Shown piece after piece: positions 7-57,534 of a stretch of 64,000 bases of DNA (position 1 is the first letter of the stretch; each line of letters starts with the position of its first letter). The notes under the pieces are model-generated. The model saw only the letters and a list, made by a program, of their open reading frames with translations. It was not told where the DNA came from and did no database searches. The position numbers and the translations under genes were made by a program. The stretch covers positions 248,001-312,000 of IMG/VR virus record IMGVR_UViG_3300018080_000098. One strand, written 5' to 3'.

Positions 7-843
7 ATGTTCCTAGGTTACTACGCTGACCAAAAAGAACGCTTCGAAGAAGCCTTCTGCGGAGCAGAAGTAGACGAAGAAGGCGCTCGAGAAGTCCTCA
101 CCACACTGGCACAAGACGCCATCGAGCTCTGGAAACAAATGTCTCTCGCCAGAAAACTGCTCCACATCGAAGATATGGCAGAAGACGCCGAACCGTTCTT
201 TCAAGGAAGGCGCCTCAAGGATTTCAAATTTCTCACAGCCTTCTTCCTGAGTGTAGAAGAAGCCAGAGAGTGCGGGTACCATCTTCTCGAAGAGAAACTT
301 CAGGACCTCCTGGAAGGCACCACGGTGCGAGAGGAGAACATCTTTATCCGTTTGGTCAACGAAGCCTGTAGCAACTTCGCAGACACCTACGACGACCTCG
401 CCAAACGGCCCACCTTCGACCGTCTCGACCATCGCGTGTTCGACCTCGGAGTAAAAAGTCCCCGCTCTCTATTGATTCCCTGCTTCCCACCACGCTTCCG
501 ACGCTCCCGAGAAGCGCATCTGTCGTTACTCCCTGAAAGAAACCACCTGACCACCTCCTTCATCGGAACGATGGCACCCCCTTCCGACGACGCTCCAACG
601 CTACGCGTCTACACAGATAGCCTGCGCTATGACACACTACGCTTCCTGGCGCCCATGAGCAGCTACGTCTTCGGCAGCCCCGAAGCCGTAGGTACTCTTT
701 ACCTGTGGCCCGTTAAAATATCCGTCGGCTTCGTGCCCTCCCCTCGGTACGTGGAGCTCCACATCGAACAGCGTATGTGCATGGAAGTCAACCACACCGG
801 CGACAACATAGCCTTCTTCGACTTGGAGCATGATGCCTTCTAG
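7..843 (+). CDS. hypothetical protein
   Basis: 278-aa ORF co-oriented with its neighbours; no recognisable motif. Confidence 0.6.
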   Translation: MFLGYYADQKERFEEAFCGAEVDEEGAREVLTTLAQDAIELWKQMSLARKLLHIEDMAEDAEPFFQGRRLKDFKFLTAFFLSVEEARECGYHLLEEKLQDLLEGTTVREENIFIRLVNEACSNFADTYDDLAKRPTFDRLDHRVFDLGVKSPRSLLIPCFPPRFRRSREAHLSLLPERNHLTTSFIGTMAPPSDDAPTLRVYTDSLRYDTLRFLAPMSSYVFGSPEAVGTLYLWPVKISVGFVPSPRYVELHIEQRMCMEVNHTGDNIAFFDLEHDAF

Positions 844-2994: not shown

Positions 2995-5124
2995 ATGCGT
3001 AAGGGACTGAGCACAACCGATTTGCGTCGGGAGCTGGCTACCCGTACCACCTCGCACGTCCTCTTCATGGACGCCAACGACAAAGGTACGAAGCTGGGCC
3101 TGAAGCTTGGACTGTCCGTAGAACCTGGACTCAAAGCAGTCCCGGGACCGGACGGTCGACTTCTTGATGGCTACGTCGTGGCGGACCAGGCTGAGGCCAA
3201 GCGGATCCGCGACGTCGCCACCAGTAACCGCGTGTTCTGTGAACAGTACGGTATTCCGGAAGTTCACGGGCTCGCAACTAAGTTGCTTCGTGGCCAGCCC
3301 ATCGACCTCAACGACCGAGAAAAGCGAATCGTCGGTCGAGTCGTGACGAGTTTCCTGGACATCGCTACCACGGGTACGGGTCGAGCAACCCACTACAACA
3401 CCCGGGAGGACCAGGAGCGCGCTGAGAAGCTGGCCCACGCGACACTGTTTGGCATGGATCGACAGACGTACAGTCTGCTGTCTTGCCTGAACGGTCTGAC
3501 GGACAACTCGAGAAAGCTCGCGTCGTGGATGCTGCTCGAGTGGCCCGGTGTGGGTGAGCCGAGCGATTACGAGCTCCAGATGGAGCGCGAGGTAGTTCGG
3601 GCTCTAGCTTCGAGCATCACGACGCCGCGCATGTTCCAGCTGTTCGGTATGCTACGCGAGACGGGCTGCAACAACAGCCGCACGCGTCGGGTCATCCTGC
3701 AGCTTCTGCTCGGGTCGGACAAGCTTCCGTGGTGGAGCGTGAAGTACCGGCGCAAGATGAAGCTGGCTCTGCAGCATGCCTGGGGCAAGCGGATGTCGAG
3801 CGTGATCGGCAGTGTTTGCCGTAAGCGCGCGTTCACGGTTAAGGAGCGCGGAATTCTTTCCGAGAACGTGTGGAAGTACGTAGAGAGCAACGAAGGTAAC
3901 GCCTTCGACACTGTGCAAGAGTGCGTCGCTTTCGTGATGGGTTCTGCGAGTGGTCGGTGGGATACTCCGTTGCTGCGCGCTTTCGTGGATGCTCGAGACG
4001 ACCTGTCGGCGGGTAAGCGTTTGCCGCCGGAGGTGCTCGAAGGTATTCGGTCTCGTTTCCATCCGCGCAAGTCGCACGACGACGTGCTGCGGTTGACGGC
4101 GAAGACGGGTGCGTTCACGGACGGCCAGAAAATCAAGCACCAGCGGCGCGTGGAGCAGGCTGGTACGAAGGTCGAGTTCGACCCGCGGCGGTACGATGCA
4201 AAGAAGCTCTACATCTACGCGTACGAGCGTGGGATGACGAGCGAGATTCGTACGGCGTTGGACGAAAAGGCTGCACAGTCGGCCACGTCGTTCCCGGTGA
4301 GCTGCGAGGACACGGTGGTGTTGGTGGACGCTTCGGGGTCGATGATCGGTGACGAGAAGACCCAGAAGTTGGCGCCGATGGCGAGCGCTCTGGCGATCAG
4401 CGATATGTTGGTCGCTGCTGGTGCGCGTCGTATTTTCGTGGGCGGCAAGGATCGTGGTCGTCGTTTGGTCCGTCCAGCGGGTGACACGTCTTTGGCGTTG
4501 CCGCTGGTGCAGGCTATTCGGGATCACAGTCCGAGCTCGGTGTTTGTGATCAGCGATGGTTACGACAACACTCCGGCTGGTCGTTTTGCGGAGGTGGTGC
4601 GGGCGTTGCGTCGTGTAAACGTGTCGACGCCGATTTATCACCTGAACCCTGTGGCTGCGGCTGAGACGGCTTCGGTGCGTCGTTTGGCGTCGGACCTGGT
4701 GCCGACGTTGGCGGTGCAGGACCCGAAGGCTCTGGCGACTATTATGTTGCGGGAGGCTTTGGAGCAGGACCCGCTGGCTGGTCTGAAGACGCTGTTGCGT
4801 CGTGGTCGCAGGGCTGCGATGGACGCTGTGCAGGGGAAGAAGGAGCTTTCAGCTGCTGTATCGAGTCGTCGTTCCGTGGGGAACGAGAAGAACGGCAAGC
4901 AGGTGCAGAAGGTTCTGCGGGACCTGTCTTCGACGATGAAGTCTGCTTTGGTGGACTTGTACGCTCGTTCCCCGGAGGGTCGTTCTGGCGTGTCATTCCG
5001 TGGAGTGGCTGCTCCGAACACGGTGACTGCTTTGCAGCGTCGCGGGCTGCTCAAGTTGAGCACTTCGGGCTTCATTCTGCACACGGACCTCGGTCGTCAG
5101 GCGGCTGAGCAGCTGAGTCGGTAG
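2995..5124 (+). CDS. TROVE/Ro60-like helical protein with a vWA domain
   Basis: MIDAS motif VVLVDASGSM, then VFVISDGYDN, after a long Arg-rich helical region; adjacent to tRNA-mimic RNAs; possible C-terminal winged helix. Confidence 0.65.
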   Translation: MRKGLSTTDLRRELATRTTSHVLFMDANDKGTKLGLKLGLSVEPGLKAVPGPDGRLLDGYVVADQAEAKRIRDVATSNRVFCEQYGIPEVHGLATKLLRGQPIDLNDREKRIVGRVVTSFLDIATTGTGRATHYNTREDQERAEKLAHATLFGMDRQTYSLLSCLNGLTDNSRKLASWMLLEWPGVGEPSDYELQMEREVVRALASSITTPRMFQLFGMLRETGCNNSRTRRVILQLLLGSDKLPWWSVKYRRKMKLALQHAWGKRMSSVIGSVCRKRAFTVKERGILSENVWKYVESNEGNAFDTVQECVAFVMGSASGRWDTPLLRAFVDARDDLSAGKRLPPEVLEGIRSRFHPRKSHDDVLRLTAKTGAFTDGQKIKHQRRVEQAGTKVEFDPRRYDAKKLYIYAYERGMTSEIRTALDEKAAQSATSFPVSCEDTVVLVDASGSMIGDEKTQKLAPMASALAISDMLVAAGARRIFVGGKDRGRRLVRPAGDTSLALPLVQAIRDHSPSSVFVISDGYDNTPAGRFAEVVRALRRVNVSTPIYHLNPVAAAETASVRRLASDLVPTLAVQDPKALATIMLREALEQDPLAGLKTLLRRGRRAAMDAVQGKKELSAAVSSRRSVGNEKNGKQVQKVLRDLSSTMKSALVDLYARSPEGRSGVSFRGVAAPNTVTALQRRGLLKLSTSGFILHTDLGRQAAEQLSR

Positions 5125-5134
5125 GAGGTGTAAA

Positions 5135-6163
5135 ATGTTGACTATCAGAGAAGTACTTCGTGGCTGTGAAGTGGGTCGTATTCAGACGGTGGGAGCGATG
5201 CAGATCATCCCGTTGACTCTCGAGAGGGATTTGCAGGATGACCGTTTTGCCACGCCGGACATTGTTCGGGTAGGTACGTCGAGCTACGGTACGATGAATT
5301 TCACGAATCCATCGGAGAAGCCTGTGCTGTTGCCGTCGCACGTGGGCTACGTGGTGAAGCAGGCTGCACAGGACCACGCGATGGCGACGGCAGGAATTGT
5401 TCCTGCGAAGCGTCAGCAGAGTTGGGACAACGCGATGTGCATTCAGGCTACTCAAGGTGGCCTGATTAACCGCGGTGAGCATAAGATGCTCATCCTGCCG
5501 TTGGCTCTGCGGCAGCCTGCGCTCGAGAAGCGGAAGGCTCGTAGCTACGACAAGCTGTGGAACTCGATTGGTTCGTACAACACGACTGCTGGTGTGGGTG
5601 GTAGTAAGAACCTCGTAACGTACATGCAAGGGTACGAGCGCCAGCTGGACCAGTTCATTGCGGAGTTCGAGGTGGTCGAGGACCAGGTGGGCGCCATCAT
5701 CCTCATCAACGGCGAAGTGATGGGATGCGAGCGTGCTCCGTGTACGGAGTATTGGCGTACGGTGTGGGAGCCGCTGGTTCGCGTGTGCTACGGCAGCGCA
5801 GCTATCGCGGCCTCCAAGCGAGCGCAGCAGTCGGAGGTGGTTCTGAAGACCCGCGTACCTCTCGAGGTACGGGACCTGTCGAACCTCGATGATCTTTGCA
5901 CCGAGCTCGAGTCGGTGGAGTCCAAGCAGGACGAGCTCGTACGTCGGCAAGTACGGCAGTTGCTGGATGACCAGTTCCAGCAGGACCAGGAGCAGCGCGC
6001 TGGGCATGCGCAGGCGGACATCGTGACGATCCGCAACGACCAGTTCTTCGGGCAGGTCGCTACCGATCAAACGTCGGGCAAGGTGCTCTACGCCTCCATG
6101 GTCGTGTCTGATGGTTGGGACGAGCGCAAGGGCTGGAAGTTGACCCAGCGATTCGAGATTTAA
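5135..6163 (+). CDS. ARPP-1/ARPP-2 (DUF6569-like) domain protein
   Basis: Motif order MQIIPL..N.SEKPVLL..QDH..CIQ..QVGAIILINGEVMG.E resembles the ARPP family. Confidence 0.6.
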   Translation: MLTIREVLRGCEVGRIQTVGAMQIIPLTLERDLQDDRFATPDIVRVGTSSYGTMNFTNPSEKPVLLPSHVGYVVKQAAQDHAMATAGIVPAKRQQSWDNAMCIQATQGGLINRGEHKMLILPLALRQPALEKRKARSYDKLWNSIGSYNTTAGVGGSKNLVTYMQGYERQLDQFIAEFEVVEDQVGAIILINGEVMGCERAPCTEYWRTVWEPLVRVCYGSAAIAASKRAQQSEVVLKTRVPLEVRDLSNLDDLCTELESVESKQDELVRRQVRQLLDDQFQQDQEQRAGHAQADIVTIRNDQFFGQVATDQTSGKVLYASMVVSDGWDERKGWKLTQRFEI

Positions 6164-6172
6164 TCCTCTAGC

Positions 6173-6205
6173 CTCGGGGAGGAAGTTTCCTCCCCGAGCT
6201 TTCTC
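6173..6205 (+). terminator. intrinsic terminator
   Basis: CTCGGGGAGGAA-GT-TTCCTCCCCGAG then a pyrimidine run. Confidence 0.7.
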
Positions 6206-6208
6206 CTC

Positions 6209-6237
6209 TTGACATTTCTTTTCGATTAAACTACATT
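6209..6237 (+). promoter_or_regulatory. sigma70-like promoter for tRNA-Leu
   Basis: TTGACA-N17-TACATT. Confidence 0.55.
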
Positions 6238-7634: not shown

Positions 7635-7722
7635 CAAGCTCCTTCTGCGACAACTCCATCTTGTAAAATAGAAGTATCAGGATTGTCACCAGGGTGGTGA
7701 CCGCTAAACAAGGAGAGTTGTC

Positions 7723-9330
7723 ATGTTTCGTAACGAGAAGTCTAACCTTCTGTTCCCACGCCTCGTTTTTCTCAAGGAGACCAAGTTCAGTAGTTGGGGT
7801 GGAGACGAGCACCGCTCCACGCGAGTCTACATTCTCGACTGGAGCAGTTTGGATGAGAAAGCGGTGAAGCAAGGGGTACGGTTGTTCCCTCGGGACCACA
7901 TTGACTGGCTGAACAATTTCCGGTTCGCTTTGCCGTACCACTACCGAAGTGAAATTCGTCGCTGCGTAAAGATGGCCACTTTGGAGTGGGAGCGTCCTCT
8001 AGGCTTCGACACCAGCATTCGGGAAATGTGTTTGGGAACGGCTACGAAGTATATCGACGTTGCTTTTAGATTGCTGGCGGACTGTCCCTACGATCCGGAG
8101 AAAGACTATTTTTATCGAGGGGATGATAGAGGCGTACTACCCTTCGCGTTGATTTATCGTTTCTGGGACGGTCAGACTGGACGAGGACTTCCCTGGTTCA
8201 AAAGTGGCTTGGCGAAGTATTGTGATAAGTGGCACCGACATAAAATAGAAACGGTCCACAAACCCTACTACCACGAACCCCTTGATGCTTTCATGGTTGC
8301 TGTTCAGCACAGCGAAAAAGAATACGCAGTAGTTCACGAAGCGCGCGAAGATGCATCAGAAGAGGCTGTAGCTGAGACTTCAATAGCAGCTTCCTGCAAA
8401 CATCTCAAACGTGTAGCAAAAACGACACCTGTTCTACCCCAAGCCCTTGGTGCGGCTAACGTGTACGAGTGGATTACCGACCCAAAATTCCTCGGACGGA
8501 AAGATGTTTTTCCGCAAAACATCAAACTACTCAGTACAGCGTTCCAGGAATACTGCCCCAACTGCGGTTATCGCCCAACCAAACACAAGGAATGCCCAGT
8601 TTGCAAAAAGGATGTTACTGAAGCTTTCGCACGCCCCTACCACGAAGTAGTAGGCGTACGAGGACAGCGGTCGGGGAACACCTTCCTCAGCGCTGTGGCA
8701 GCTACATATGTGCTACACAAGATTTTTCGTTTGCCTAGACCGCTCAATGAGCAGTTTGGTATGCCGCCCAATGTGGAGATCGAGATGACTTTCGTAGACC
8801 CACTTAAAGCAATCTGGGAGACCTTCTGGCGGCTCGTACATGAATCACAGTGGTTCGCTTCAGGAAGTTTACTAGCAAAGGATCCCAGCAACCTCAAAGA
8901 AGTTTTTCTTCCAGGATGCACCTTGGTTCTACGACGAACGGACCTCAACGAATGCCACAGAGGGGGCACGCGCGTCTTCGCTACCATCGACAGTCCGGAT
9001 TGGATTGAGAGAATAACTTCTTGGGGGTACTCCGTCCAAGATGTGTACCAAGCTCTCCGTAATAGCTTAGTAACTCTTCGTGGTAGACAGAATAAAAGTG
9101 GCACCGCTCCTCTACTGTTCCTTCTCGGATCTCCAAGCCCCAACAGTTTCCTGGGTTCCCTCAAAAAATCCTCACTAGATAACGACGACCGACTTTGGGT
9201 GCAACAGCCCACGTGGGAGGTCAATCCCTTTGTTACCATGGAGCAGCTCAGAAAAGAAGACATGGGAAACCCCGCGCTCTTCTTTAGAGACTACGGCGCT
9301 CAGATACCCGAGCCTTCTGAAGACGGCTAG
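7723..9330 (+). CDS. degenerate terminase-large-subunit ATPase paralog lacking the nuclease domain
   Basis: Colinear motifs shared with 21893-24175 (AANV.EW..FLG, GQRSG, RG.TR, ALxNSL.T.R, TWE.NP, RD.. near the end). Confidence 0.7.
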   Translation: MFRNEKSNLLFPRLVFLKETKFSSWGGDEHRSTRVYILDWSSLDEKAVKQGVRLFPRDHIDWLNNFRFALPYHYRSEIRRCVKMATLEWERPLGFDTSIREMCLGTATKYIDVAFRLLADCPYDPEKDYFYRGDDRGVLPFALIYRFWDGQTGRGLPWFKSGLAKYCDKWHRHKIETVHKPYYHEPLDAFMVAVQHSEKEYAVVHEAREDASEEAVAETSIAASCKHLKRVAKTTPVLPQALGAANVYEWITDPKFLGRKDVFPQNIKLLSTAFQEYCPNCGYRPTKHKECPVCKKDVTEAFARPYHEVVGVRGQRSGNTFLSAVAATYVLHKIFRLPRPLNEQFGMPPNVEIEMTFVDPLKAIWETFWRLVHESQWFASGSLLAKDPSNLKEVFLPGCTLVLRRTDLNECHRGGTRVFATIDSPDWIERITSWGYSVQDVYQALRNSLVTLRGRQNKSGTAPLLFLLGSPSPNSFLGSLKKSSLDNDDRLWVQQPTWEVNPFVTMEQLRKEDMGNPALFFRDYGAQIPEPSEDG

Positions 9331-12290: not shown

Positions 12291-13688
12291 ATGCAGAAGC
12301 TTCTGTACAAAGGCCGCGTGTACAAACGCGCGCTATCCAATACAGGGTACGACTCGGTAAGCTACCACTCCGAGCAGGAGATGAAAGGTCTGCGTCCAAG
12401 CCCACTTTACGGTGTCATTTCCATCACCGATCCCGGCAGAACCGCTAACCTGCCCGAGGGGTGGGGGAGCATCCTGCGTCTCCAGTTCGACGATGTTGAA
12501 GAACCAGATCCCTACAAACCCTACGGTGACCCCTATGCCCGGTCCTCTGATCTATTCACTACCCAAGACGCTCAGAAAATCATCCAATGGCTCAACGCTA
12601 ACAAACGTGAGCTCGCGGGTGTCTACGTGCACTGCTGGGGAGGAGTCTCCCGCTCCGCAGCCGTCGCCAAATTCATCGCAGAAAAATATGGCATCCCCTT
12701 CGACCACTCCTACGACAAGTACAACACGCTAGTCTACGACCTGCTTAAACAGGAAGATGGTAACGCAGCGACCTCGCGTACAGCTGCGAGTTATAGTAGC
12801 GATACACTATTTTTGGCTAAGAGTGTACATACTCCGAAGGACTGGTGCTACGACCACATCGGCTTTGTGGATAAAGCTACCGGAAACTTCGTACAGATGA
12901 GTGGACATCGGCATAAGGAAGGCGTATTTTCACTATCCAAGTTGACTGATGAGCCCACTATCCAATCCGACCACTACGATACCATAAAGCTTCCGAAGAC
13001 CGTCACATTTACCAGAAACCCACTAGGAGCAGTTAACTGCGTTACCTTTGTTGTTGCTGTCCTCAACGCGAATGGTATCGATAGATGGGACCGGGAAGAC
13101 TTCCATCGCATCTTCAAGTGCGACAAGTCTACGACTGCTAGCAGTAACAAGACCACAATTCGATATAAAGGTGCCACCTACCGCCGTGCCTACGCCGATG
13201 ATTACCTCTACCACATCACCTACGTTGGTAGCCTCCCCGCCATCGCTGCTCGAGGACTTCACCCGGGTACCGGTGTCACCTTTGGCAAGGGCTACTCCGG
13301 TTACTCCGCAGGAAAACTGTTCCTGTCTGAGTGGGACGGCGTAGGTTTCTGGGTGGACCGCTTGGGAGCTATGGCCGAGAATCGCGCCGACAACCCCGTC
13401 CAAGACGGCCTCATTCCCATCGTTATCCGTGTCCCCGATGGCATCGTGCCCGACGTCGAAGAAGATACTCCTGGCACCCACGATTCCAATGCCGGTGCGT
13501 GGACAACCACCCAACCAATCCCACCTTCCCAACTCGAGGTGTACGACGGCGCCTCGTGGCTTCCCCTCTCCTCCGTCGACCACGAAATGCTTACTGAGGA
13601 AGCCTACGAAGCCGCTGAAAAAGAATTCGAGGACGACGAGGAGCTCGTCTACTTGAACGCTTCTCAGTTCGAACCCACCTTTTCGTAG
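12291..13688 (+). CDS. multidomain effector: PTP/DSP phosphatase, permuted papain-like domain, ADP-ribosyltransferase-like domain
   Basis: VHCWGGVSRS (CX5R); DHIG...NCVTFV; YLYHIT..SLPAIAARGLHP; two YKG motifs. Confidence 0.7.
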   Translation: MQKLLYKGRVYKRALSNTGYDSVSYHSEQEMKGLRPSPLYGVISITDPGRTANLPEGWGSILRLQFDDVEEPDPYKPYGDPYARSSDLFTTQDAQKIIQWLNANKRELAGVYVHCWGGVSRSAAVAKFIAEKYGIPFDHSYDKYNTLVYDLLKQEDGNAATSRTAASYSSDTLFLAKSVHTPKDWCYDHIGFVDKATGNFVQMSGHRHKEGVFSLSKLTDEPTIQSDHYDTIKLPKTVTFTRNPLGAVNCVTFVVAVLNANGIDRWDREDFHRIFKCDKSTTASSNKTTIRYKGATYRRAYADDYLYHITYVGSLPAIAARGLHPGTGVTFGKGYSGYSAGKLFLSEWDGVGFWVDRLGAMAENRADNPVQDGLIPIVIRVPDGIVPDVEEDTPGTHDSNAGAWTTTQPIPPSQLEVYDGASWLPLSSVDHEMLTEEAYEAAEKEFEDDEELVYLNASQFEPTFS

Positions 13689-13824
13689 CCTACAATCCTC
13701 TTGACATCCCAGGTAAGCACGCTATATCATGCGTGTTGGAGGACATTTCCATGCTTCAGAGATTGCGCTTGCTGGCGCAGCAGTTCTTCTCGCTCTGAGC
13801 TGCTGCAAGGGAGAAACATACACC

Positions 13825-14364
13825 ATGACCTACCCCACCAATCTACGCACACTTGTACTAAACCAGGGCTACGAGCCCATCCGGGTAATCAATTGGCAGC
13901 GCGCCGTCACCATGGTCTGGCTCGACAAGGCGTCTGTGCTCAGCGAGTACGACGACGCAGTGCATTCCAAGCACCTAACTTGGAACATCCCAGCTGTTAT
14001 TGGGCTTCGCTACAAAACCAAGCGGTTCGTGCCAGATGTCAAGCTAACCCGGCAGTACGTTTACGCGAGAGATTTGTGGTGTTGCCAATACTGTGGCCAG
14101 AAGTTCCCTGCTTCGAAGCTCACCTTCGACCACGTCGTACCGCGAGCTCGCGGCGGCAGAACTACCTGGACCAACGTGGTCACTTGTTGCACACCGTGCA
14201 ATCAGCAGAAGGGTGACCTTCCGCTCAAAGATTGCGGGCTCACATTGCTACGTAAACCCCGGAAGCCCAGATGGATGCCTGCGCTCCTCGTGAAAAGTTT
14301 CTCCGAGCGTGGTGTCCCAAACCAGTGGCACGATTACATCGGGTGGCTACGTGCTGCTGCCTGA
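13825..14364 (+). CDS. HNH endonuclease
   Basis: RD..CQYCG..LTFDHVVPRARGG.TTW.NVVTCC..CN..KG. Confidence 0.9.
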   Translation: MTYPTNLRTLVLNQGYEPIRVINWQRAVTMVWLDKASVLSEYDDAVHSKHLTWNIPAVIGLRYKTKRFVPDVKLTRQYVYARDLWCCQYCGQKFPASKLTFDHVVPRARGGRTTWTNVVTCCTPCNQQKGDLPLKDCGLTLLRKPRKPRWMPALLVKSFSERGVPNQWHDYIGWLRAAA

Positions 14365-21892: not shown

Positions 21893-24175
21893 ATGTCGTC
21901 GACGAAGAAGCCATTCCCGAAACTGAAAAAGCGTTCCCTCACAGACTTTGGAGGGGATGCTAGGGAAGAGGCTTCCGCGAAGAAAAAGAATACACCCAAA
22001 AAGAAAGTTTCTCCCGCGTCAACTCCCACCACGAAACCGAAAGAGTCGTTCAGCACTAACATCTACGCTGCCCTCGATGCAGCCTCCGAAGTCACCGAAG
22101 ATAGCACTAAGGTACCGAGCCCCAACGAGCTCATGAAGCTCGCTATCTCAGCGGACCTCGACCCCTCCATCTTCGTCGAGCGCAGCTTCCCGGTAGCAGC
22201 CAACGTTATAGAGTGGTGTCGGAGTGCCAACTTCCTGGGCTTTTCTGGTGAGCTACGGCCTCGACAGTTCCAGGTCCTCTCGCAATTCTTCGGGGATGTC
22301 TGCTACCAGTGCTCCGATGTCCATTACGTACACAACGTCCCTGTAGATGATACTATCGGAAACGTTATCGATCGATTCGTCCTGCTTGAACATGGTGTTT
22401 GTCCTAAATGCCGACGTAATCGCACAGAGATGTTGGCAGACTGGCTATCAGATCCACGGTTCGCAGATTACAATCAGTTCGATGAAAAGCTTCAACTGCG
22501 TCCTGTACCTCCTAATGAATTTGTTGGTGTGTGGGGGCAGAGGTCTGGAAAATCCTTCACTGTTTCTACTTTTGCTGTCCCTTACATATTGCATCGCTAC
22601 TTAGCGCTCCCAAGCCCCACAAAGTATTTTGAGCAGGCTAGTAATTCTATCTTACAAGCTACGTTTGTGGCGCCTACTATTTACCAGGCGGAAGACAACA
22701 TGTGGAAGTCCTTCCGGGAAATCTATGAAAGTTCGCCATGGTTTAGAGAGATAAAGAGCCATAACATCGCGGAAGGGAAGCGTTTAGGGGTATCTCTTTA
22801 TGAAGCTGCGAAGCGTTTCATCTTTTTCCCCGGAAAGCGCATCGCTATTTATATGCAAGCTGCCAGCTCTATTACGCTGCGTGGTGCAACCAGACTTTGC
22901 TGTACCCTTGATGAGTTAGGTTGGTTTAATACTACATCTGATGGGAAGCGCCGTACAGGGGTCAAAGACGGCACTGAAATATTTAACGCGCTAGAGAACA
23001 GCTTGCAAACTATACGTACCCAAGCAAACAGGCGTCGTAGGAGTGGTGATTATAACACGCTTGATGGTTATATGCTCAACATTTCCAGCCCAACTTCAGT
23101 AGCCGACCCTATTATGCAACGGGCCACGGTAGCGGATAAGAGCCCTCGCATGTTCTACACACACTATGCAACATGGGAGGCTAACCCTCAAGAAGATGAG
23201 GATACTATCAAGGAACAGAAAGCTGGTGACCCTGAATCGCTGATGCGCGACTTCTACGCTATACCGCCCCGAGCACTCAGTCCTTTCTTCCCAAACCACG
23301 CGCTCGTGGAGCAACTCGTAGCAGATGAGACCGTAATCGAACCCCTGTTCAACTACGTTATCGATAAAGAGAGCCATACCGGTGAGCCCTCTCTTCTACG
23401 CCCCACGCCTAAAGATATCAAAGCAGACATCTTCAACGCACGGGTGCTCGCTGTGGATAACGGAGAAATCAACGATCACTTTGCTCTCTGCATCGCCCGC
23501 TATGAGCCAGAAACTGAAGGTATCATTTACGAGGAGTTCCTGGAAGTAGCTCCCTACCGAGGTTTCCATGTAGACCTCAACTGGTGCTACAACGAGCTCA
23601 TCGTTCCGCTCGTTCGCTCCTTCCAGTTCGTGCACGTAGTATTCGATCGCTGGAACAGCGCTGTCCAGGTCCTCGACCTTCGCAACACACACGATATGGA
23701 CGCGGAACGGTACACCCTCAAACTGAAAGACTACAAAGAATTCAAACACGACTTACAGGACGTGAAGATTCATTTCCCCGCAGCAGAGAAGAACCCGGAT
23801 GACCTGCTCAAAATGCGAAACGTAGCCATGCGCGCCGATTACCCCAGAGCGCACTTCCAGCTGCAACTCACTACTGTAGAGCAGTTCGGCAACAAGGCCC
23901 CCATGAAACCAGAGAACGGTACGGATGACCTGTTTCGCACAGCCGTTCTCTGCCACAGCCAAATCCGTCGCTACCAAGACGAGTACGCCAAACGAAGCCG
24001 AGGCCGTGGCCGTCGCCTGCCCGGCATGATGACAGCTGGCCTGTTCCGCGGCGCTAGCACCCGAGGAATGGGTATGACCAACCGCGGCCTCGAGGGTGGT
24101 GGTCCCAATACCGGGCGCTCCGTAGGAATGTTCTACAACAGGTCGAGCCGCAGCCCCTTCAACAGAGGAAGCTAA
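21893..24175 (+). CDS. terL: terminase large subunit
   Basis: Walker A GQRSGKS, Walker B TLDELG, nuclease AVDNG..D, VVFDRWNS, TDDL; upstream of portal. Confidence 0.85.
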   Translation: MSSTKKPFPKLKKRSLTDFGGDAREEASAKKKNTPKKKVSPASTPTTKPKESFSTNIYAALDAASEVTEDSTKVPSPNELMKLAISADLDPSIFVERSFPVAANVIEWCRSANFLGFSGELRPRQFQVLSQFFGDVCYQCSDVHYVHNVPVDDTIGNVIDRFVLLEHGVCPKCRRNRTEMLADWLSDPRFADYNQFDEKLQLRPVPPNEFVGVWGQRSGKSFTVSTFAVPYILHRYLALPSPTKYFEQASNSILQATFVAPTIYQAEDNMWKSFREIYESSPWFREIKSHNIAEGKRLGVSLYEAAKRFIFFPGKRIAIYMQAASSITLRGATRLCCTLDELGWFNTTSDGKRRTGVKDGTEIFNALENSLQTIRTQANRRRRSGDYNTLDGYMLNISSPTSVADPIMQRATVADKSPRMFYTHYATWEANPQEDEDTIKEQKAGDPESLMRDFYAIPPRALSPFFPNHALVEQLVADETVIEPLFNYVIDKESHTGEPSLLRPTPKDIKADIFNARVLAVDNGEINDHFALCIARYEPETEGIIYEEFLEVAPYRGFHVDLNWCYNELIVPLVRSFQFVHVVFDRWNSAVQVLDLRNTHDMDAERYTLKLKDYKEFKHDLQDVKIHFPAAEKNPDDLLKMRNVAMRADYPRAHFQLQLTTVEQFGNKAPMKPENGTDDLFRTAVLCHSQIRRYQDEYAKRSRGRGRRLPGMMTAGLFRGASTRGMGMTNRGLEGGGPNTGRSVGMFYNRSSRSPFNRGS

Positions 24176-24583: not shown

Positions 24584-26995
24584 ATGTTCAAAGTGAGATT
24601 CGATATGACGGAGGGGCGCTACCGCCGCGTCGCCAACCGCACCGCCGCAGTCATGCGGTCGCACAGCTCCTCCTCAGGTGCCCGCCGCAGGTACGGCACA
24701 GCTACCACAGGAGCTATCCCACCAGATAAGCTCCGCCACGCTGTAGGCTCCCTTACGAATGTCACCGCGCCAATGCAAGCAGGCGCAGACATGTCCCAGC
24801 GATACTCCCCCGTCTTCGAACGCGCCGAGGACCCGACTATCGCTGAAGATTTTATGCCTGCCGACCCCCAAACGCAGCATAAAATATTTCGCAACCTTAT
24901 CATGTTTGACCCCATTGCAGGTCCCGCCACCGAGTACTGGCGCGACCTCGCCTTCTCTCAAAATGTCATCCTTAGTGGCATCGACGACGATAAAGCCATT
25001 CAATTCTTTCAAGACGCCATCGACGCATCCGGTATCGTCCCTGCGATGCCCATGCTCCTCAGCGACTACCTCACGTTCGGTAAGTTCGTCTTCCACATGA
25101 TTTTCGATAAGAAGATGGGTTACTGGACCGAGGTCATCCCACACGACCTCGATTACGTCTCCATCAAGGTTTCCCCCATTCCGAGCCTCGACCCCATCAT
25201 CGACATCCAGCCCACACAAGACATGCGAGAGTGGGCCATCTCTTCCGACCCCCGCGTCATCGCACAACGTCGTGATGTAGACGCCGTACTCGTTAGCCTC
25301 ATGGCAGCCGGACGCCCTATTCCCCTAGCGCCCGAAAACACCATGTTCCTTCCGCGTCGAGTGTTCGCTACCGACTACTACGGTACCTCGTACCTCACGC
25401 GCATTATGCCCTTCAAAATCTATGAGAAGGCTCTCCTCGATGCATCCATCGCTGGAGCTCGTAGACGTGCTGGACCCCTCTGGCACATCAAAGTGTGGCC
25501 CGACGCTACCGATGTTGAGATGTCCGAAATCCTCGACCTCTTCTTCGCCGCAGAAGAAGACCCCATCGGCGGCAAAGTCCTCACCCGAGAAGGCGTCGAT
25601 GTTGTCCCTGTTGGTGGAGGCTCCGCAGACTTCTGGAAACTCTCTGATGAGTGGAACTTCCTCAGCGAAGCTAAGATGCACGCGTTGGGAATCAGCGCTA
25701 CCTTCTTAGACGGAACAGCTAACTACAACAGCATGGACATGATTCTGTCCACCTTCCTCGAGAAGGTCCGGTCTGTCCGTTCTTACTTTACGCGCAAAAT
25801 CATCCTTGAGAAAATCTGCCGACAGCTCGCGCAGATCCATGGCATGAAAAAGCGCTCGCAGGCAGACCTGTCCCACCGCATACGTACTAGCAGGAAAATC
25901 AATAAACGTTCAGACCCAGAGTACATGCTGCCAACTATCGAGTGGGATAAGCCCCTAGCACCCATCGCAGACCGCGACTACCTCGATATCATCAACATGC
26001 TTGATGAAGCTGGGCTTCCTGTACCCATCCGTATGAAAACTCAGGTAGCCGGTTTCGATATCGACAAAGCACTCGACTCTTTCGATTCAGACCTCGAAAC
26101 CTGGAAGAAGATTTACGAACACCGTCGTGCCAAAGCAGAGCTCGCCGCGCAGTACGGGTTCGATGAGAGTGGTGCATTCCAAGGCGGTGAGCTTGGTACA
26201 GGGCTCGGAGGAGCTGGTTTAGGCGCAGAGATTGGTGGTGAGTTGCCAGGAGGAGGCCTCCCCGGGGAGCTTCCCCCCGAAGAGGGTTTGGGTGAGCTCC
26301 CTGAGCTCGGTGGAGGAGAAGCTGCTCCTGAGCTTGGTGGTGAGGAAGCTGCTCCCGCTACTGAAGAACTTCCCCCGGCAGCACCTACTCCTGGTGCTGG
26401 TGAAGGGTTCGGAGCAGATCTGGCAGCCCCGCGCTTCAAGGCTAAGCCCCTTCCTCAACGTCTCGTGGTCAGCAAAGCTCGTATTCAAGCAGCTAACGAT
26501 ATTGTTCAGGACCTCGAGCGAATCCCCATCTGGGATAATGATGGCGCTCTCTTTGGTTTACCTCGTCGACGCGTAGCAAAAATCCTGGACCGCATTGCTC
26601 ATACAGACCCCAAAGAGAAGCGTCGCAAAAAACTCGGTAGAGCTCTCCCCAAAGAGCTCGCGAAAACAGAAGGGCTCGATCGGATGCAGGCCAACATGGT
26701 CCAATACCTCGCTATCCGACTGGGGTTCGTTCCACCCGTAGAAATTCAAGAAGAGGCTTTCGATAGCATCCGCAAGTTCATCGTTTCCCGTATGGACGGT
26801 AACGGCTTGACGAAAGCAGTGAGCAACGAGATTGTGATGCTCACTAAGATAGCTGAAGCTGGCGGACGTCGGTCCGATAGCAAGTTGGCTAAAAAGATAA
26901 ACCCTGCGTTGATTATGCCACGCTACGAAAGCGCCCTTTCCGATTCCCAGCTACTAACGGGCGTCGTCGACTCGAACCCGTTCATCAAATCGTAA
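24584..26995 (+). CDS. portal protein
   Basis: Position after TerL; DYL.FGK, YGTSYL, ALGISATFLDG.ANY motifs; Gly/Glu/Pro-rich insertion. Confidence 0.75.
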   Translation: MFKVRFDMTEGRYRRVANRTAAVMRSHSSSSGARRRYGTATTGAIPPDKLRHAVGSLTNVTAPMQAGADMSQRYSPVFERAEDPTIAEDFMPADPQTQHKIFRNLIMFDPIAGPATEYWRDLAFSQNVILSGIDDDKAIQFFQDAIDASGIVPAMPMLLSDYLTFGKFVFHMIFDKKMGYWTEVIPHDLDYVSIKVSPIPSLDPIIDIQPTQDMREWAISSDPRVIAQRRDVDAVLVSLMAAGRPIPLAPENTMFLPRRVFATDYYGTSYLTRIMPFKIYEKALLDASIAGARRRAGPLWHIKVWPDATDVEMSEILDLFFAAEEDPIGGKVLTREGVDVVPVGGGSADFWKLSDEWNFLSEAKMHALGISATFLDGTANYNSMDMILSTFLEKVRSVRSYFTRKIILEKICRQLAQIHGMKKRSQADLSHRIRTSRKINKRSDPEYMLPTIEWDKPLAPIADRDYLDIINMLDEAGLPVPIRMKTQVAGFDIDKALDSFDSDLETWKKIYEHRRAKAELAAQYGFDESGAFQGGELGTGLGGAGLGAEIGGELPGGGLPGELPPEEGLGELPELGGGEAAPELGGEEAAPATEELPPAAPTPGAGEGFGADLAAPRFKAKPLPQRLVVSKARIQAANDIVQDLERIPIWDNDGALFGLPRRRVAKILDRIAHTDPKEKRRKKLGRALPKELAKTEGLDRMQANMVQYLAIRLGFVPPVEIQEEAFDSIRKFIVSRMDGNGLTKAVSNEIVMLTKIAEAGGRRSDSKLAKKINPALIMPRYESALSDSQLLTGVVDSNPFIKS

Positions 26996-36599: not shown

Positions 36600-37736
36600 A
36601 TGTCTCAAGTGTTTTCAGGAAAAGCTGCTCTTCGGGATCGGAAGGGCAACGACATCGCACGGGGACCCGCCTTCAAGGCAATGCCTCGCACAGGCAGCAT
36701 CAGCTATTCGGAGACGACTCCGATGGTGGATGCGTCGGGAACCTACAACCAGCCCAGCGTGCGTGGGCTCATCGAGCAGATGGATGCCATCGTGAAGCTG
36801 GCGCGTGCGGGTGAAATCCGCAGCGACGCTCCGGCCACGACTGGTCCGTCTGCGTGGGACCAGCAGGGTCACTTCGTCCGGACGGCGCTCGCGGAGCAGC
36901 GTCCGGTCGAGGGTGGTCCGTTCCAGGTCCTGGGTGAAGTGTTCACGGACTCCGTGGCTGAGACCATGGGTCGCATGGGCTTCACCAACAAGGTGTTCGC
37001 TCAGCAGGATGTTGCTGAGGGTGGCACCGCCCGTATTCGTATCCGTCAGAAGGACGTCACCACGTGGCTGATGCTGTCGGACGGACACACGGTCGAGTCT
37101 CTCATCCGCCAGAAGTACATCTACCCTCGGGGCTACAACCTCGAGACGTTGGTGCTGATGGAGGAGGCGGAGATTCATGAGGCTGGCGCGCAGATCATCG
37201 AGGAGAAATACAACGACGCCCTCGAGGCGACGATGGTTCGTGATGACAACATCACGAAGTTCCTCCTGGATCAGGCTGCTCCCACTGACAACGACGTCAT
37301 CGCGTTCAACGCGTTCACGCCTCAGGTCTTTGTTACGCTGCGTAACCAGATCTGGCAGTGGAGCCTCCCTGTCCCCCACGCCCTGATGGCCGTGGACCTG
37401 TGGGACGACCTGTTCGCGGATGCGGACTGGGCACGGTGGTACTCGCCCATCGAGAAGCACGAGTTGGCCGTAGAAGGCAAGCTCGGTCGCCTCGGTGACA
37501 TCGAGCTCATCACCGACGGATTCCGCTACGACACCTTGCAGGTTCTGCAACCTGGCGAGGTGTACTTCCTGTCCTCGCCCTCGACCCTCGGTGTCAAGGC
37601 GAACATGATCGCGCTGAACAGCAGCGTGGTGGACCAGCGCATGCTCGGCCGGGCCGTGCGTGGGTGGTTCATCTTCCTGCGTCAGGCGAGCGTGCTCGGC
37701 AACAGCCGCGGCGTCTCCAAGGGTGTGCGGCTCTAG
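36600..37736 (+). CDS. major capsid protein (HK97-fold predicted)
   Basis: 378 aa, strong codon bias, follows the decoration gene and precedes a strong terminator; G.LG.LG.IELITD motif. Confidence 0.75.
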   Translation: MSQVFSGKAALRDRKGNDIARGPAFKAMPRTGSISYSETTPMVDASGTYNQPSVRGLIEQMDAIVKLARAGEIRSDAPATTGPSAWDQQGHFVRTALAEQRPVEGGPFQVLGEVFTDSVAETMGRMGFTNKVFAQQDVAEGGTARIRIRQKDVTTWLMLSDGHTVESLIRQKYIYPRGYNLETLVLMEEAEIHEAGAQIIEEKYNDALEATMVRDDNITKFLLDQAAPTDNDVIAFNAFTPQVFVTLRNQIWQWSLPVPHALMAVDLWDDLFADADWARWYSPIEKHELAVEGKLGRLGDIELITDGFRYDTLQVLQPGEVYFLSSPSTLGVKANMIALNSSVVDQRMLGRAVRGWFIFLRQASVLGNSRGVSKGVRL

Positions 37737-56049: not shown

Positions 56050-57534
56050 TCAAGGATAACAATCCATAGGGCAGATGGCGTAGACTTCCAGACCGTCGCA
56101 GATACCGTTGCCGCAAGTAGAGAGGCAGTCAGGCGGACAATTGTTCATCGTTTCTCCCATATCGCACGAACCGTCACCGCAATTCTGAGCACAATCGAGG
56201 CTACAGTTGCTATACGCTTCCCCATAACCAACTGCACAGATACCATCACCGCAGCTTCCGGGGCAATCCTGCTGGCAGGTCACCCAGGTTTCTGCGCCAT
56301 CGCAAAGATTGTTTCCGCAGACACCAGCACCGCAATCAGCTGGGCAGCTACCCGCGTCCTCTCCATGAATAGCCAGGCACAATCCGTCACCGCAACTGGT
56401 GCCACAATCCATAGGACAGCTAATAGGGCCTTCGCTGCCTTCGCAAGTGCCGTTGCCGCAGACGTTGGGGGGACAGTCGAAGGAGCAGTTTAGAGAATTC
56501 TCCCCGAGAGAGATCTCGCAGGTACCGTTGCCACACAGCCCGGGTCCGCAATCCTGTGGGCAGCTTTGTACATCCTCAGTGGGTTCGCACAAGCTGTTAC
56601 CGCAAACGTAGGTGGTTGGGCAGTCCTGCGGGCACGATATGGCGTTGTCGGCAAAGTTGGGATCGCAGACACCGTCACCGCAGATGGGCCACGTACAGTC
56701 TTCTCGGCACGCATCCGGTGTGGTGTCGCTATTGAAGACGCCGTTGTCGCACGCCTCGCCAGTTTCTTGAATGCCGTTACCGCAGACGGGGCTAGTGGGC
56801 TCGGTTTCGCAGACGGCGTTACAACCGTCCCCGTCGACGGTGTTTCCGTCGTCGCACTCTTCCCCAGTGTCCTGGACGCCGTCGCCACAGTAGGCCACCA
56901 AGCAATTCAGCCGACAAGCGTCGGGCTCGGTATCGGAGTTGTCGACTCCGTCGTCGCACTCTTCACCCGGTTCTTGAACTCCGTTACCGCAGAAGGGGTC
57001 GGTAGGTTCGGTTTCGCAGATGGAGCTACACCCGTCCCCGTCGACGGTGTTACCGTCGTCGCACTCTTCCCCGGTATCTTGGACACCGTCCCCGCAGAAG
57101 GGGACCTCGCAATCGAGGCGACATGCGTCGGGTTGCGAGTTGGAGTTGCTGGAGCCGTCGTCGCAGGCTTCCCCGACCTCTTGGATACCGTTGCCGCAGA
57201 CGGGGTCCGCCTCCGTTTCGCAGGTACCGGAGCAACCGTCTCCGCTGGTGCTGTTGCCGTCGTCGCACTCTTCTCCGGTGTCCTGCACACCGTCTCCGCA
57301 GTAGAAGACGGTGCAGTCGAGGCGACACGCGTCCGGTTCCGTATCGGAGTTAGCCGCGCCGTCGTCGCACTCCTCGCCCCAGTTCTGAACTCCGTCCCCG
57401 CACTCTCCTGGGTTGTCGTTCTGGTTTATGTTGTTGGCGTTGGTGCCAGCGTCGTTACCGTTCGTGAAGGTGTCTCCACTCGTACCACAGGCAGCCAGCA
57501 TCAGTACCATTAGCAGTGCAAAAATTCGTTCCAT
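56050..57534 (-). CDS. lipoprotein with Myxococcus-type Cys-rich repeats (DUF4215-like)
   Basis: Lipobox LAAC; repeats CGDG.Q..GEECDDGN...GDGC...C, then CG(N/D)G.C...E....CP.DC. Confidence 0.85.
   Translation of the reverse strand: MERIFALLMVLMLAACGTSGDTFTNGNDAGTNANNINQNDNPGECGDGVQNWGEECDDGAANSDTEPDACRLDCTVFYCGDGVQDTGEECDDGNSTSGDGCSGTCETEADPVCGNGIQEVGEACDDGSSNSNSQPDACRLDCEVPFCGDGVQDTGEECDDGNTVDGDGCSSICETEPTDPFCGNGVQEPGEECDDGVDNSDTEPDACRLNCLVAYCGDGVQDTGEECDDGNTVDGDGCNAVCETEPTSPVCGNGIQETGEACDNGVFNSDTTPDACREDCTWPICGDGVCDPNFADNAISCPQDCPTTYVCGNSLCEPTEDVQSCPQDCGPGLCGNGTCEISLGENSLNCSFDCPPNVCGNGTCEGSEGPISCPMDCGTSCGDGLCLAIHGEDAGSCPADCGAGVCGNNLCDGAETWVTCQQDCPGSCGDGICAVGYGEAYSNCSLDCAQNCGDGSCDMGETMNNCPPDCLSTCGNGICDGLEVYAICPMDCYP

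What the first reader, a model, noticed from the sequence alone, without database searches (positions are those of the whole stretch)
7723..9330. Second terminase ATPase copy with broken catalytic motifs
Seen, paralog versus TerL: AANVYEWITDPKFLG/AANVIEWCRSANFLG; Walker A GQRSGNT/GQRSGKS; Walker B TIDSPDW/TLDELGW; ALRNSLVTLR/ALENSLQTIR; TWEVNP/TWEANP; FRDYGA/MRDFYA. The paralog stops where the nuclease domain would begin and has an unrelated N-terminus of about 240 aa. Known: Avs2-type and other defences sense terminase, and the Walker A Lys and Walker B Glu are essential. Inference: an intact ORF kept as a decoy for terminase-sensing immunity, or as a packaging regulator or competitor inhibitor.
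Basis: partly seen in the sequence, partly recalled or inferred. Interest (0 to 1): 0.68.

Follow-up and report, generated by a model that had tools for sequence, protein, structure and literature searches.

The report
Terminase-derived pseudo-ATPase in jumbo phage
A 350-kb sediment phage carries, besides its real DNA-packaging enzyme, a conserved nuclease-less relative of that enzyme's motor domain in which every ATP-handling motif has been replaced and which is fused to an unknown domain; it is a kept, non-catalytic protein, and its job is still unknown.

Summary
ORF 7723-9330 (+, 535 aa) is intact, has a good ribosome-binding site, and residues 244-530 are homologous to the ATPase domain of the window's large terminase (TerL, 21893-24175): BLASTP E 5e-27, the same PHROG family, and a confident model whose best matches are solved TerL ATPase domains. 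It ends at the ATPase/nuclease boundary.

It is not a decaying copy. It belongs to a small clade from at least three phage lineages. A second jumbo-phage contig also has its own real TerL. In this clade four nucleotide motifs are changed:
- Q motif: Q to N.
- Walker A: K to N or S.
- Walker B: E to S, N or D.
- C motif: SSP to GSP.

The zinc ribbon, P-loop arginine, a loop at the position of the P74-26 arginine finger, and the lid are kept. Rough dN/dS is about 0.2. The sister protein (312 aa) still has K and E. A separate nuclease-less TerL relative with changed Walker motifs arose independently inside the window's TerL clade.

The N-terminal 170 aa belong to a large family from big phages with no recognisable fold, fused elsewhere to other domains.

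Function is inferred only. I favour a binding-only accessory or regulator of packaging. The decoy idea is untested, and loss of ATP binding argues mildly against it. This is a new variant of the nuclease-less TerL paralog kind (T4 vs.8).

The parts
6173..6237 (+). Intrinsic-terminator-like hairpin (6173-6198) followed by a sigma-70-like promoter (TTGACA-17-TACATT, 6209-6237). This is the possible start of the transcription unit holding the HTH gene, two small genes and the paralog.
   Evidence: Consensus scan only. Not evidence of function.
7710..7715 (+). Ribosome-binding site AAGGAG, 7 nt before the ATG at 7723.
   Evidence: Read directly from the sequence.
7723..9330 (+). Whole gene: 535-aa two-module protein (P0001).
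   Evidence: An identical copy lies on a second IMG/VR contig.
7723..8232 (+). N-terminal domain (residues 1-170). It belongs to an uncharacterised family found in large phages. Conserved blocks: FDTxIRExC, LLxDCxYD, FWxxQTGRG.
   Evidence: Hundreds of homologs; alignments A2 and A6; model pLDDT 89.5; no fold match in PDB, BFVD or ESM Atlas.
8233..8451 (+). Linker (residues 171-243) with a long helix at 184-219, then a disordered stretch.
   Evidence: Model secondary structure and pLDDT. P0008 aligns from about residue 194.
8452..9312 (+). TerL-derived ATPase-fold domain (residues 244-530): N-terminal helix, zinc ribbon, RecA-like core and lid. No nuclease domain follows.
8554..8604 (+). Zinc ribbon CPNC...CPVC (C278, C281, C291, C294). 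It is kept from TerL, with a shorter loop.
   Evidence: The four Cys are invariant in TerLs and in the paralog clade.
8653..8682 (+). Altered Walker A, GVRGQRSGNT (311-320): Lys replaced by N319, clade-specific R313, P-loop R316 kept.
   Evidence: The lambda comparison comes from PMC6379665 Table 1.
8956..8973 (+). HRGGTR loop (412-417) just before the Walker B strand. R413, G414, T416 and R417 are kept, as in TerLs. By position this is where the P74-26 TerL trans-arginine finger lies.
   Evidence: Column table. The position of the P74-26 R139 finger is described in PMC5727402. The equivalence is by position only, not tested.
8977..9003 (+). Altered Walker B, FATIDSPDW (419-427): D423 kept, catalytic Glu replaced by S424, followed by the clade-specific P-D-W.
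9127..9135 (+). Altered C (coupling) motif: GSP in place of TerL's SSP.
   Evidence: The alignment is shifted by two residues here.
9208..9300 (+). Lid and linker blocks PTWEVNP (496-502) and FRDYGA (521-526), kept from TerL. The protein ends 9 residues later.
21893..24175 (+). The phage's real large terminase (760 aa): GQRSGKS, LDELGW, ISSP and a nuclease domain. The portal gene follows at 24584-26995.
   Evidence: phrog_17415 at E 1.9e-93. Portal is phrog_16240 at E 3.4e-87. Nearest cultured relatives are the TerLs of Motura, PaBG and phiRSL1, at about 30% identity.

Best explanation
**Shown.** The gene encodes a real, selectively maintained protein built from two independently mobile modules.
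- The C-terminal module (244-530) descends from the ATPase domain of a PaBG/phiRSL1-type jumbo-phage large terminase and has no nuclease domain.
- It belongs to a small clade in which the adenine-recognition Q, the Walker A Lys, the catalytic Glu and the first Ser of the coupling motif have all been replaced. The fold, zinc ribbon, N-terminal helix, P-loop Arg, the loop at the position of the P74-26 arginine finger, and the lid are conserved.
- It therefore cannot cut DNA. By analogy with lambda gpA E179 mutants, it should not hydrolyse ATP. It is a pseudo-ATPase.

**Inferred.** It works by binding, not catalysis.
- The surfaces it keeps are ones that, in other phages, are implicated in contacts between TerL ATPase domains, their neighbours in the ring and other packaging partners (partly from my own knowledge, untested here). 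The constant C-module is therefore a 'terminase-shaped' docking unit.
- The N-terminal module differs between lineages and supplies the lineage-specific activity or target.
- My preferred reading is an accessory, non-essential modulator of the phage's own packaging machinery. It could be a non-catalytic partner or competitor of TerL at motor assembly or initiation.
- It is accessory rather than core. It sits about 12.5 kb upstream of the TerL-portal module, in a block of small and conflict-type genes. I found it in only two of the twelve related jumbo-phage records checked for it.
For: **Homology and fold.**

**Clade with consistent substitutions.**
- Walker A reads GVRGQRSGNT in P0001, GIRGQRTGNS in P0008, GIRGQRTGSS in P0154 and GIRGQRTGNS in L142.
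- Walker B reads IDSPDW, VDNPDW, IDDPDW and IDSPDW.
- The column-by-column comparison with 27 TerLs is.

**Maintenance.**
- The second genome, G001, carries both a real TerL (48% identical to the window's) and a clade member, P0154.
- Between the two genomes the paralog's ATPase domain is 41% identical and the TerL ATPase domain 51.7%.
- dN/dS is about 0.17 for P0008 against P0154 and about 0.25 for P0001 against L142.

**Phylogeny.** The clade has SH-aLRT support of 96. Together with the still-intact 312-aa P0049 it has 99, and it lies outside all 33 TerLs sampled.

**Modular N-termini.**
- P0001's N-domain occurs in hundreds of other proteins. It is fused elsewhere to GT2 and AAA domains.
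- P0008 and P0154 share a different N-terminus.

**Consequence of losing the Glu.** All lambda gpA E179 changes are lethal, and non-conservative ones abolish hydrolysis (PMC6379665).

**Tolerance of inactive subunits.** A TerL ring can accept an inactive subunit, with reduced performance (T4; PMC8589836).

**Patchy distribution.**
Against: - No evidence of any physical contact with TerL. The single complex prediction gave no answer.
- No conserved neighbouring gene links the clade to packaging.
- The gene lies outside the TerL-portal block.
- No expression data exist. Only one DNA run holds the sequence.
- Ten related jumbo-phage records checked lack it. Five are fragments, so their absence is weak evidence. 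Cultured relatives show a single TerL-like place each. Packaging in this family clearly does not need it.
- The replaced pocket residues (R313, P425-D426, VDPxK at 358-362) are themselves conserved. This may mean the pocket has a new ligand rather than none.
- The function of the N-terminal domain is completely unknown.
Confidence: 0.4

Rival explanations
1. Immune decoy or sensor blocker. The terminase-shaped module binds host sensors that recognise TerL (Avs1-3, Upx) without activating them, or the bulky N-terminal module prevents sensor oligomerisation. The real TerL is thereby protected.
For: - EcAvs2 needs only the ATPase domain of terminase. [quoted passage not shown]
- The gene lies among accessory, conflict-type genes: a vWA plus ARPP-1 pair, an HTH gene and an HNH gene.
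- It is patchily distributed, as counter-defence genes usually are.
- N-terminal modules are swapped between lineages.
Against: - EcAvs2 contacts the ATP held by terminase's Walker motifs through a bridging ATP. This protein has lost the Q, the Lys and the Glu, so part of the recognised surface should be missing.
- In the co-expression assay the intact paralog vs.8 is toxic with EcAvs2 rather than protective.
- There is no match to known defence or anti-defence models.
- The host and its defence systems are unknown.
Confidence: 0.18
2. It is not dead. It has a lambda-like deviant P-loop in which R313 takes the place of the canonical Lys. The protein still binds a nucleotide or another phosphate ligand and acts as a slow NTPase or a nucleotide-dependent switch, possibly in a process unrelated to packaging.
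For: - The clade motif R-G-Q-R-[ST]-G-[NS]-[ST] matches lambda gpA KSA-R79-VGYS position by position: a basic residue at position 1, Arg at 4, Gly at 6 and Ser/Thr at 8 (PMC6379665 Table 1).
- The substituted pocket residues are conserved within the clade rather than drifting.
- P0154 has Asp at the Glu position. The lambda E179D mutant retains attenuated hydrolysis.
Against: - The basic residue is Arg, not Lys.
- The catalytic position varies (S, N, D, S), which is not expected for a working active site.
- The Q motif and the first Ser of the coupling motif are also lost.
- Non-conservative changes of lambda E179 abolish hydrolysis.
Confidence: 0.15
3. A weapon for competition between phages. 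The protein is a dominant-negative terminase subunit that poisons the packaging motor of co-infecting related phages. The producer's own TerL is spared because of sequence divergence.
For: - Inactive subunits doped into a T4 TerL ring lower DNA engagement, velocity and packaging success (PMC8589836).
- The gene has an accessory, patchy distribution.
- The ring-interface arginine loop is kept.
Against: - No evidence for specificity, and the producer's own TerL belongs to the same family.
- The complex prediction gave no answer.
- This reading does not explain the variable N-terminal modules.
Confidence: 0.08
4. A decaying duplicate (pseudogene) or a chance ORF.
For: The catalytic residues are lost, and the branch is long (end branch 1.05 against 0.08 for TerL).
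Against: - The 535-codon frame is intact and has a ribosome-binding site.
- Homologs at about 37-58% overall identity (41-57% in the ATPase domain) are intact in other contigs and end at the same point.
- 33 columns are invariant across the clade.
- dN/dS is about 0.2.
- The structure model is confident.
Confidence: 0.02

Closest known systems
Large terminase (TerL) of PaBG / phiRSL1 / Motura-type jumbo phages (PHROG phrog_17415), including the window's own TerL
   Same: Same ATPase-domain fold and the same lineage-specific features: the N-terminal helix A-x-N-x-x-x-W...FLG, a four-Cys zinc ribbon before the P-loop, GQR-x-G, the RG-x-TR loop, and the PTWExNP and RDxGA lid blocks.
   Different: No nuclease domain. 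The Q motif, Walker A Lys, catalytic Glu and first Ser of the coupling motif are replaced. It has a 243-residue foreign N-terminus in place of TerL's Lys-rich leader. It lies outside the TerL-portal module.
T4 vs.8, an ATPase-only paralog of T4 TerL (described in PMC13601566)
   Same: A phage-encoded stand-alone relative of the TerL ATPase domain without a nuclease domain, restricted to certain phage taxa, function unknown.
   Different: vs.8 keeps Walker A and B and derives from T4-type TerL. The present clade derives from phrog_17415-type TerL, has lost the catalytic residues and carries N-terminal fusions. Within this clade only P0049 (312 aa, K and E intact) resembles vs.8 in design.
P0005, a nuclease-less TerL relative from another jumbo-phage contig (L003)
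   Same: A TerL ATPase domain without a nuclease domain, with changed Walker motifs (GQRSGAN, VDNFGY), flanked by unrelated N- and C-terminal regions.
   Different: Independent origin. It nests inside the window's TerL clade (SH-aLRT 100) and is 43-45% identical to the window's TerL but only 25% to P0001. It keeps the Q and SSP motifs. I could not check whether its contig also has a real TerL, because the record is not held.
Non-catalytic subunits of ring or arc ATPases, such as the clamp-loader delta-prime subunit (analogy from general knowledge, not tested)
   Same: An ATPase-fold subunit that has lost nucleotide hydrolysis but keeps the interface elements, including an arginine presented to a neighbouring subunit.
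   Different: No evidence that this protein enters a TerL ring. The AAA+ clamp-loader fold belongs to a different ASCE lineage.

Membership tests
Large terminase (TerL) | TerL-type ASCE ATPase fold with sequence homology to TerL | tested here: met
   BLASTP E 5e-27; phrog_17415 at E 6.5e-17; Foldseek best matches 7ks4, 2o0h and 6z6d.
Large terminase (TerL) | Walker A with phosphate-binding Lys (G-x-x-x-x-G-K-[ST]) | tested here: not met
   GQRSGNT, with N319 at the Lys position. The clade shows N, N, S, N.
Large terminase (TerL) | Walker B Asp followed by the catalytic Glu | tested here: not met
   IDSPDW: D423 is kept and S424 stands at the Glu position. The clade shows S, N, D, S.
Large terminase (TerL) | C-terminal RNase H-like nuclease domain | tested here: not met
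   The protein ends at residue 535, 9 residues after the RDxGA block. TerL continues for about 300 more residues.
ATPase-only TerL paralogs of the T4 vs.8 kind | Stand-alone TerL ATPase domain without nuclease, encoded in addition to the real TerL | tested here: met
   Both genes are present in G000 and in G001.
ATPase-only TerL paralogs of the T4 vs.8 kind | [quoted passage not shown] | tested here: not met
   Only the sister protein P0049 keeps them.
ATPase-only TerL paralogs of the T4 vs.8 kind | Descent from T4-type TerL | tested here: not met
   The best PHROG for all clade members is phrog_17415. The only other, far weaker hit is phrog_2 (E above 1e-4), for P0049 and P0154. The vs.8 sequence itself was not compared.
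Pseudoenzyme (pseudo-ATPase) | Catalytic residues lost while fold and sequence stay under purifying selection across lineages | tested here: met
   Lack of activity is inferred from sequence, not measured.
Lambda-type deviant Walker A | Basic residue at position 1 of the P-loop replacing the canonical Lys (K-S-A-R-V-G-Y-S) | tested here: inconclusive
   R313-G-Q-R316-S-G-N-T matches the spacing, but the residue is Arg, not Lys. Function cannot be tested here.
Small terminase (TerS) | TerS family membership (DNA-binding HTH plus oligomerisation core) | tested here: not met
   No TerS family appears in the Pfam or PHROG scans of P0001. The N-domain model matches no known fold.
Anti-defence decoy for terminase sensors | Binds Avs or Upx sensors and reduces their activation by TerL | not testable with these tools
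   The host and its sensors are unknown. There is no PADLOC match. The only literature context is.

The most novel reading that the evidence does not exclude
Terminase-derived pseudo-ATPases with swappable N-terminal modules are a previously unrecognised class of jumbo-phage accessory factor that uses the terminase shape as a handle. Two forms of this reading remain open. In one, the protein plugs or misleads host sensors that recognise terminase. In the other, it joins the packaging motor as a non-catalytic regulatory subunit. The independent second origin (P0005) would then reflect recurrent selection for such proteins.
Probability: 0.22. Interest if true: 0.8.

Novelty: new variant of a known kind. 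Interest (0 to 1): 0.55.

Why it matters
- **Target of immunity.** Terminase is the most conserved protein of tailed phages and a main target of bacterial pattern-recognition immunity (Avs1-3, Upx).
- **Open question.** Nuclease-less relatives of its ATPase domain have only just been noticed (T4 vs.8), and nobody knows what they do.
- **What this clade adds.** Such relatives also exist in an unrelated jumbo-phage lineage. They can lose all nucleotide-handling residues and still be conserved. They are combined with different N-terminal modules, and a similar protein arose at least twice.
- **What follows.** The terminase fold seems to be reused as a binding module. This gives concrete constructs for testing whether phages regulate their packaging motor with non-catalytic subunits, or manipulate terminase-sensing immunity.
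- **Second finding.** The work also exposes a large, well-conserved phage domain family (the N-terminal 170 aa) with a confident model and no detectable fold relative.

Tried and rejected
- **Complex prediction.** TerL ATPase domain plus the paralog's C-domain gave 'no answer', score 0.00. This is not evidence either way.
- **Word searches.** The whole protein and residues 240-535 returned almost nothing. That is why I used the one exhaustive HMMER search.
- **N-domain.** No Pfam, PHROG or PADLOC family. No fold match by Foldseek against PDB, VIA-align wide (best Z 5.2), ESM Atlas or BFVD.
- **Gene neighbourhood.** No gene besides the query family is shared between the paralog loci or among ten N-domain loci.
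- **Rosetta-stone test.** I asked whether genomes with one module encode the other module separately. The result was negative: no N-domain in G001 and four others, and no paralog in five N-domain genomes.
- **More clade members.** The viral-contig scan found only G001. The metagenome scan returned only the G000 and G001 contigs. Five fragments with close TerLs and five complete jumbo genomes of 295-424 kb have TerL only. Cultured phages show one TerL-like place each.
- **Expression.** One sediment DNA run, kept as contigs, holds the gene and no RNA run does. I did not use read laying because contigs from the likely source sample would add nothing.
- **Polymorphism.** The second contig is 100% identical in nucleotides, so it gives no information.
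- **dN/dS.** Synonymous sites are saturated in four of six pairs. The two values given are rough.
- **First tree.** It included nuclease-domain columns by mistake. I repeated it on ATPase columns only, with the same result.
- **Operators' rules.** I used no alternative genetic code.
Full report
**Setting.**
- The window is bases 248001-312000 of a 349,793-bp virus record with direct terminal repeats, that is, a complete jumbo-phage genome. One sediment metagenome run holds the sequence.
- The window's real large terminase is the 760-aa product of 21893-24175. It hits phrog_17415 at E 1.9e-93 and has Walker A GQRSGKS, Walker B LDELGW and a nuclease domain.
- The portal gene follows it at 24584-26995.
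- Its nearest cultured relatives are the TerLs of Achromobacter phage Motura, Pseudomonas phage PaBG and Ralstonia phage phiRSL1, at about 30% identity.

**The observation.**
- ORF 7723-9330 (+) is intact (535 aa). AAGGAG lies 7 nt before the ATG.
- Residues 210-529 align with TerL residues 62-459 at 26% identity, E 5e-27. The protein hits the same PHROG TerL family.
- A model of residues 230-535 (pLDDT 88.1) has solved TerL ATPase domains as its best structural matches: P74-26, T4 gp17, HK97 and D6E.
- The protein ends 9 residues after the RDxGA block that closes the ATPase domain, so no nuclease domain is present. Residues 1-243 are unrelated to TerL.

**It is a conserved clade, not a decaying copy.**
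- Word-based searches found almost nothing for the C-terminal half, so I ran the exhaustive HMMER search.
- The nearest relatives of residues 243-530 are:
  - P0008, 764 aa.
  - P0009, a fragment of the 523-aa protein P0154 on a 221,679-bp phage contig, G001.
  - P0023, cut off by the end of its contig.
  - P0049, 312 aa.
- All of these end at the same point as P0001.
- Walker A reads GVRGQRSGNT, GIRGQRTGNS, GIRGQRTGSS and GIRGQRTGNS. Walker B reads IDSPDW, VDNPDW, IDDPDW and IDSPDW.
- Comparison with 27 TerLs, column by column, shows what changed in the clade:
  - the Q of the adenine-recognition motif (to N);
  - the Walker A Lys (to N or S);
  - the catalytic Glu (to S, N or D) and the two residues after it (LG to PD);
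  - the first Ser of the SSP coupling motif (to G).
- The same comparison shows what is kept: the four zinc-ribbon cysteines, G314, Q315, R316 and G318 of the P-loop, the RG-x-TR loop before the Walker B strand, D423, and the lid blocks PTWEVNP and RDxGA.
- G001 carries both a real TerL (48% identical to the window's) and the paralog. Between the two genomes the paralog's ATPase domain is 41% identical and the TerL ATPase domain 51.7%.
- Where synonymous distance is computable, dN/dS is about 0.17 and 0.25. The other pairs are saturated.
- Neutral decay is therefore excluded.

**Origin.**
- On ATPase columns only, P0001, P0008 and P0154 form a clade (SH-aLRT 96). With P0049 the support is 99. 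This group is separated from all 33 sampled TerLs by a branch with support 99.
- P0049 has a strong ribosome-binding site at its own start. It keeps Q, K, E and SSP. The likely history is a nuclease-less but still intact ATPase paralog first, followed by loss of the catalytic residues.
- The gene is thus not a recent duplicate of the window's TerL.
- A different protein, P0005 (865 aa), has GQRSGAN and VDNFGY and no nuclease domain. It nests inside the window's TerL clade (support 100; 43-45% identical to the window's TerL). It is an independent second case.

**The N-terminal module.**
- Residues 1-170 belong to a large family. Most of the 806 hits are to this module, and 375 hits have E below 1e-10. 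Members are mostly 200-280 aa and always start at the N-terminus.
- Nearly invariant blocks are FDTxIRExC, LLxDCxYD and FWxxQTGRG.
- Members occur on large phage contigs of 52-358 kb. Some are fused to glycosyltransferase or AAA domains. In one locus the next gene is an AAA ATPase.
- The model is confident (pLDDT 89.5) but matches nothing in PDB, BFVD or the ESM Atlas.
- P0008 and P0154 carry a different N-terminus, which they share with each other.
- The terminase-like module is therefore the constant part and the N-terminus the exchangeable part.
- I found no conserved neighbouring gene and no genome that encodes the two modules separately.

**What it probably does.** *Shown:*
- The protein has no nuclease domain.
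- It lacks the residues that TerLs need for hydrolysis. In lambda gpA every change of the catalytic Glu is lethal, and non-conservative changes abolish hydrolysis (PMC6379665).

*Inferred:*
- It acts by binding.
- The retained RG-x-TR loop lies where the P74-26 trans-arginine finger lies, between helix 2 and strand 3 (PMC5727402). This equivalence is by position only.
- The N-terminal helix, zinc ribbon and lid are also kept.
- A T4 TerL ring tolerates an inactive subunit but performs worse (PMC8589836).
- I therefore favour a non-catalytic partner or competitor of TerL, or of TerL's partners. It would be accessory, because related jumbo phages do without it.
- My confidence in this mechanism is modest. 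The only interaction test gave no answer.

**Rivals.**
- Decoy for terminase sensors.
  - In favour: EcAvs2 needs only the ATPase domain. The intact paralog vs.8 is predicted to fit its pocket (PMC13601566).
  - Loss of ATP binding fits escape from such sensors at least as well as attraction of them.
- Deviant P-loop.
  - The clade-specific R313 sits exactly where lambda gpA has K76 in KSA-R79-VGYS. The substituted pocket residues are conserved.
  - Nucleotide or phosphate binding without hydrolysis therefore remains possible.
- Competition between phages through a dominant-negative subunit is conceivable but unsupported.

**Novelty.** Nuclease-less TerL ATPase paralogs are known from T4 (vs.8), with intact motifs and unknown function. 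I found no description of a conserved, catalytically stripped, N-terminally fused clade derived from jumbo-phage TerL. I file it as a new variant of a known kind.

Noticed in passing
window 2995-6163 (+): A 709-aa protein with a weak vWA match (below Pfam's cut-off; DxSxS-type motif) is followed directly by a 342-aa ARPP-1/ARPP-2 domain protein. A strong terminator-like hairpin at 6173-6198 closes the pair. It looks like a phage-borne conflict-system gene pair.
   Followed up: partly
L003:2937-5534 (P0005, 865 aa; Logan contig of 166 kb): An independent nuclease-less TerL relative with changed Walker motifs (GQRSGAN, VDNFGY). It is 43-45% identical to the window's TerL and has unrelated N- and C-terminal regions. 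I could not check whether its phage also has a normal TerL.
   Followed up: partly
L017:3015-5417 (IMGVR_UViG_3300036715_002535): The TerL of this contig carries an intein-like insertion of about 150 residues inside the Walker A motif (GQRC...HNSGKT).
   Followed up: no
L004:2170-3045: A 291-aa ORF is 36% identical to residues 99-274 of the window's portal protein. This may be a portal-fragment paralog. The contig also carries an N-domain family member (P0003).
   Followed up: no
window 12291-13688 (+): A 465-aa protein with a weak dual-specificity-phosphatase match in its first third and an unassigned C-terminal half. It lies between the paralog and an HNH endonuclease gene (13729-14364).
   Followed up: no
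window 21893-24175 (TerL): The real TerL has a Lys-rich, low-complexity leader of about 100 residues and a Gly/Arg-rich tail of about 60 residues. Its zinc-ribbon insertion before the P-loop is longer than the paralog's.
   Followed up: no
window 7-843 and 36600-37736 (+); window 56490-57290 (-): Two pairs of paralogous ORFs inside the window. The first pair shares 26% identity over 160 aa. The second is an adjacent pair sharing 58% identity over 55 aa.
   Followed up: no
L008:25-963 (P0049): A stand-alone 312-aa TerL ATPase-only protein with intact Q, Walker A, Walker B and SSP motifs and its own AGGAGG ribosome-binding site. It is the sister of the pseudo-ATPase clade and the closest design analogue of T4 vs.8. 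The contig is only 1.3 kb, so there is no context.
   Followed up: partly
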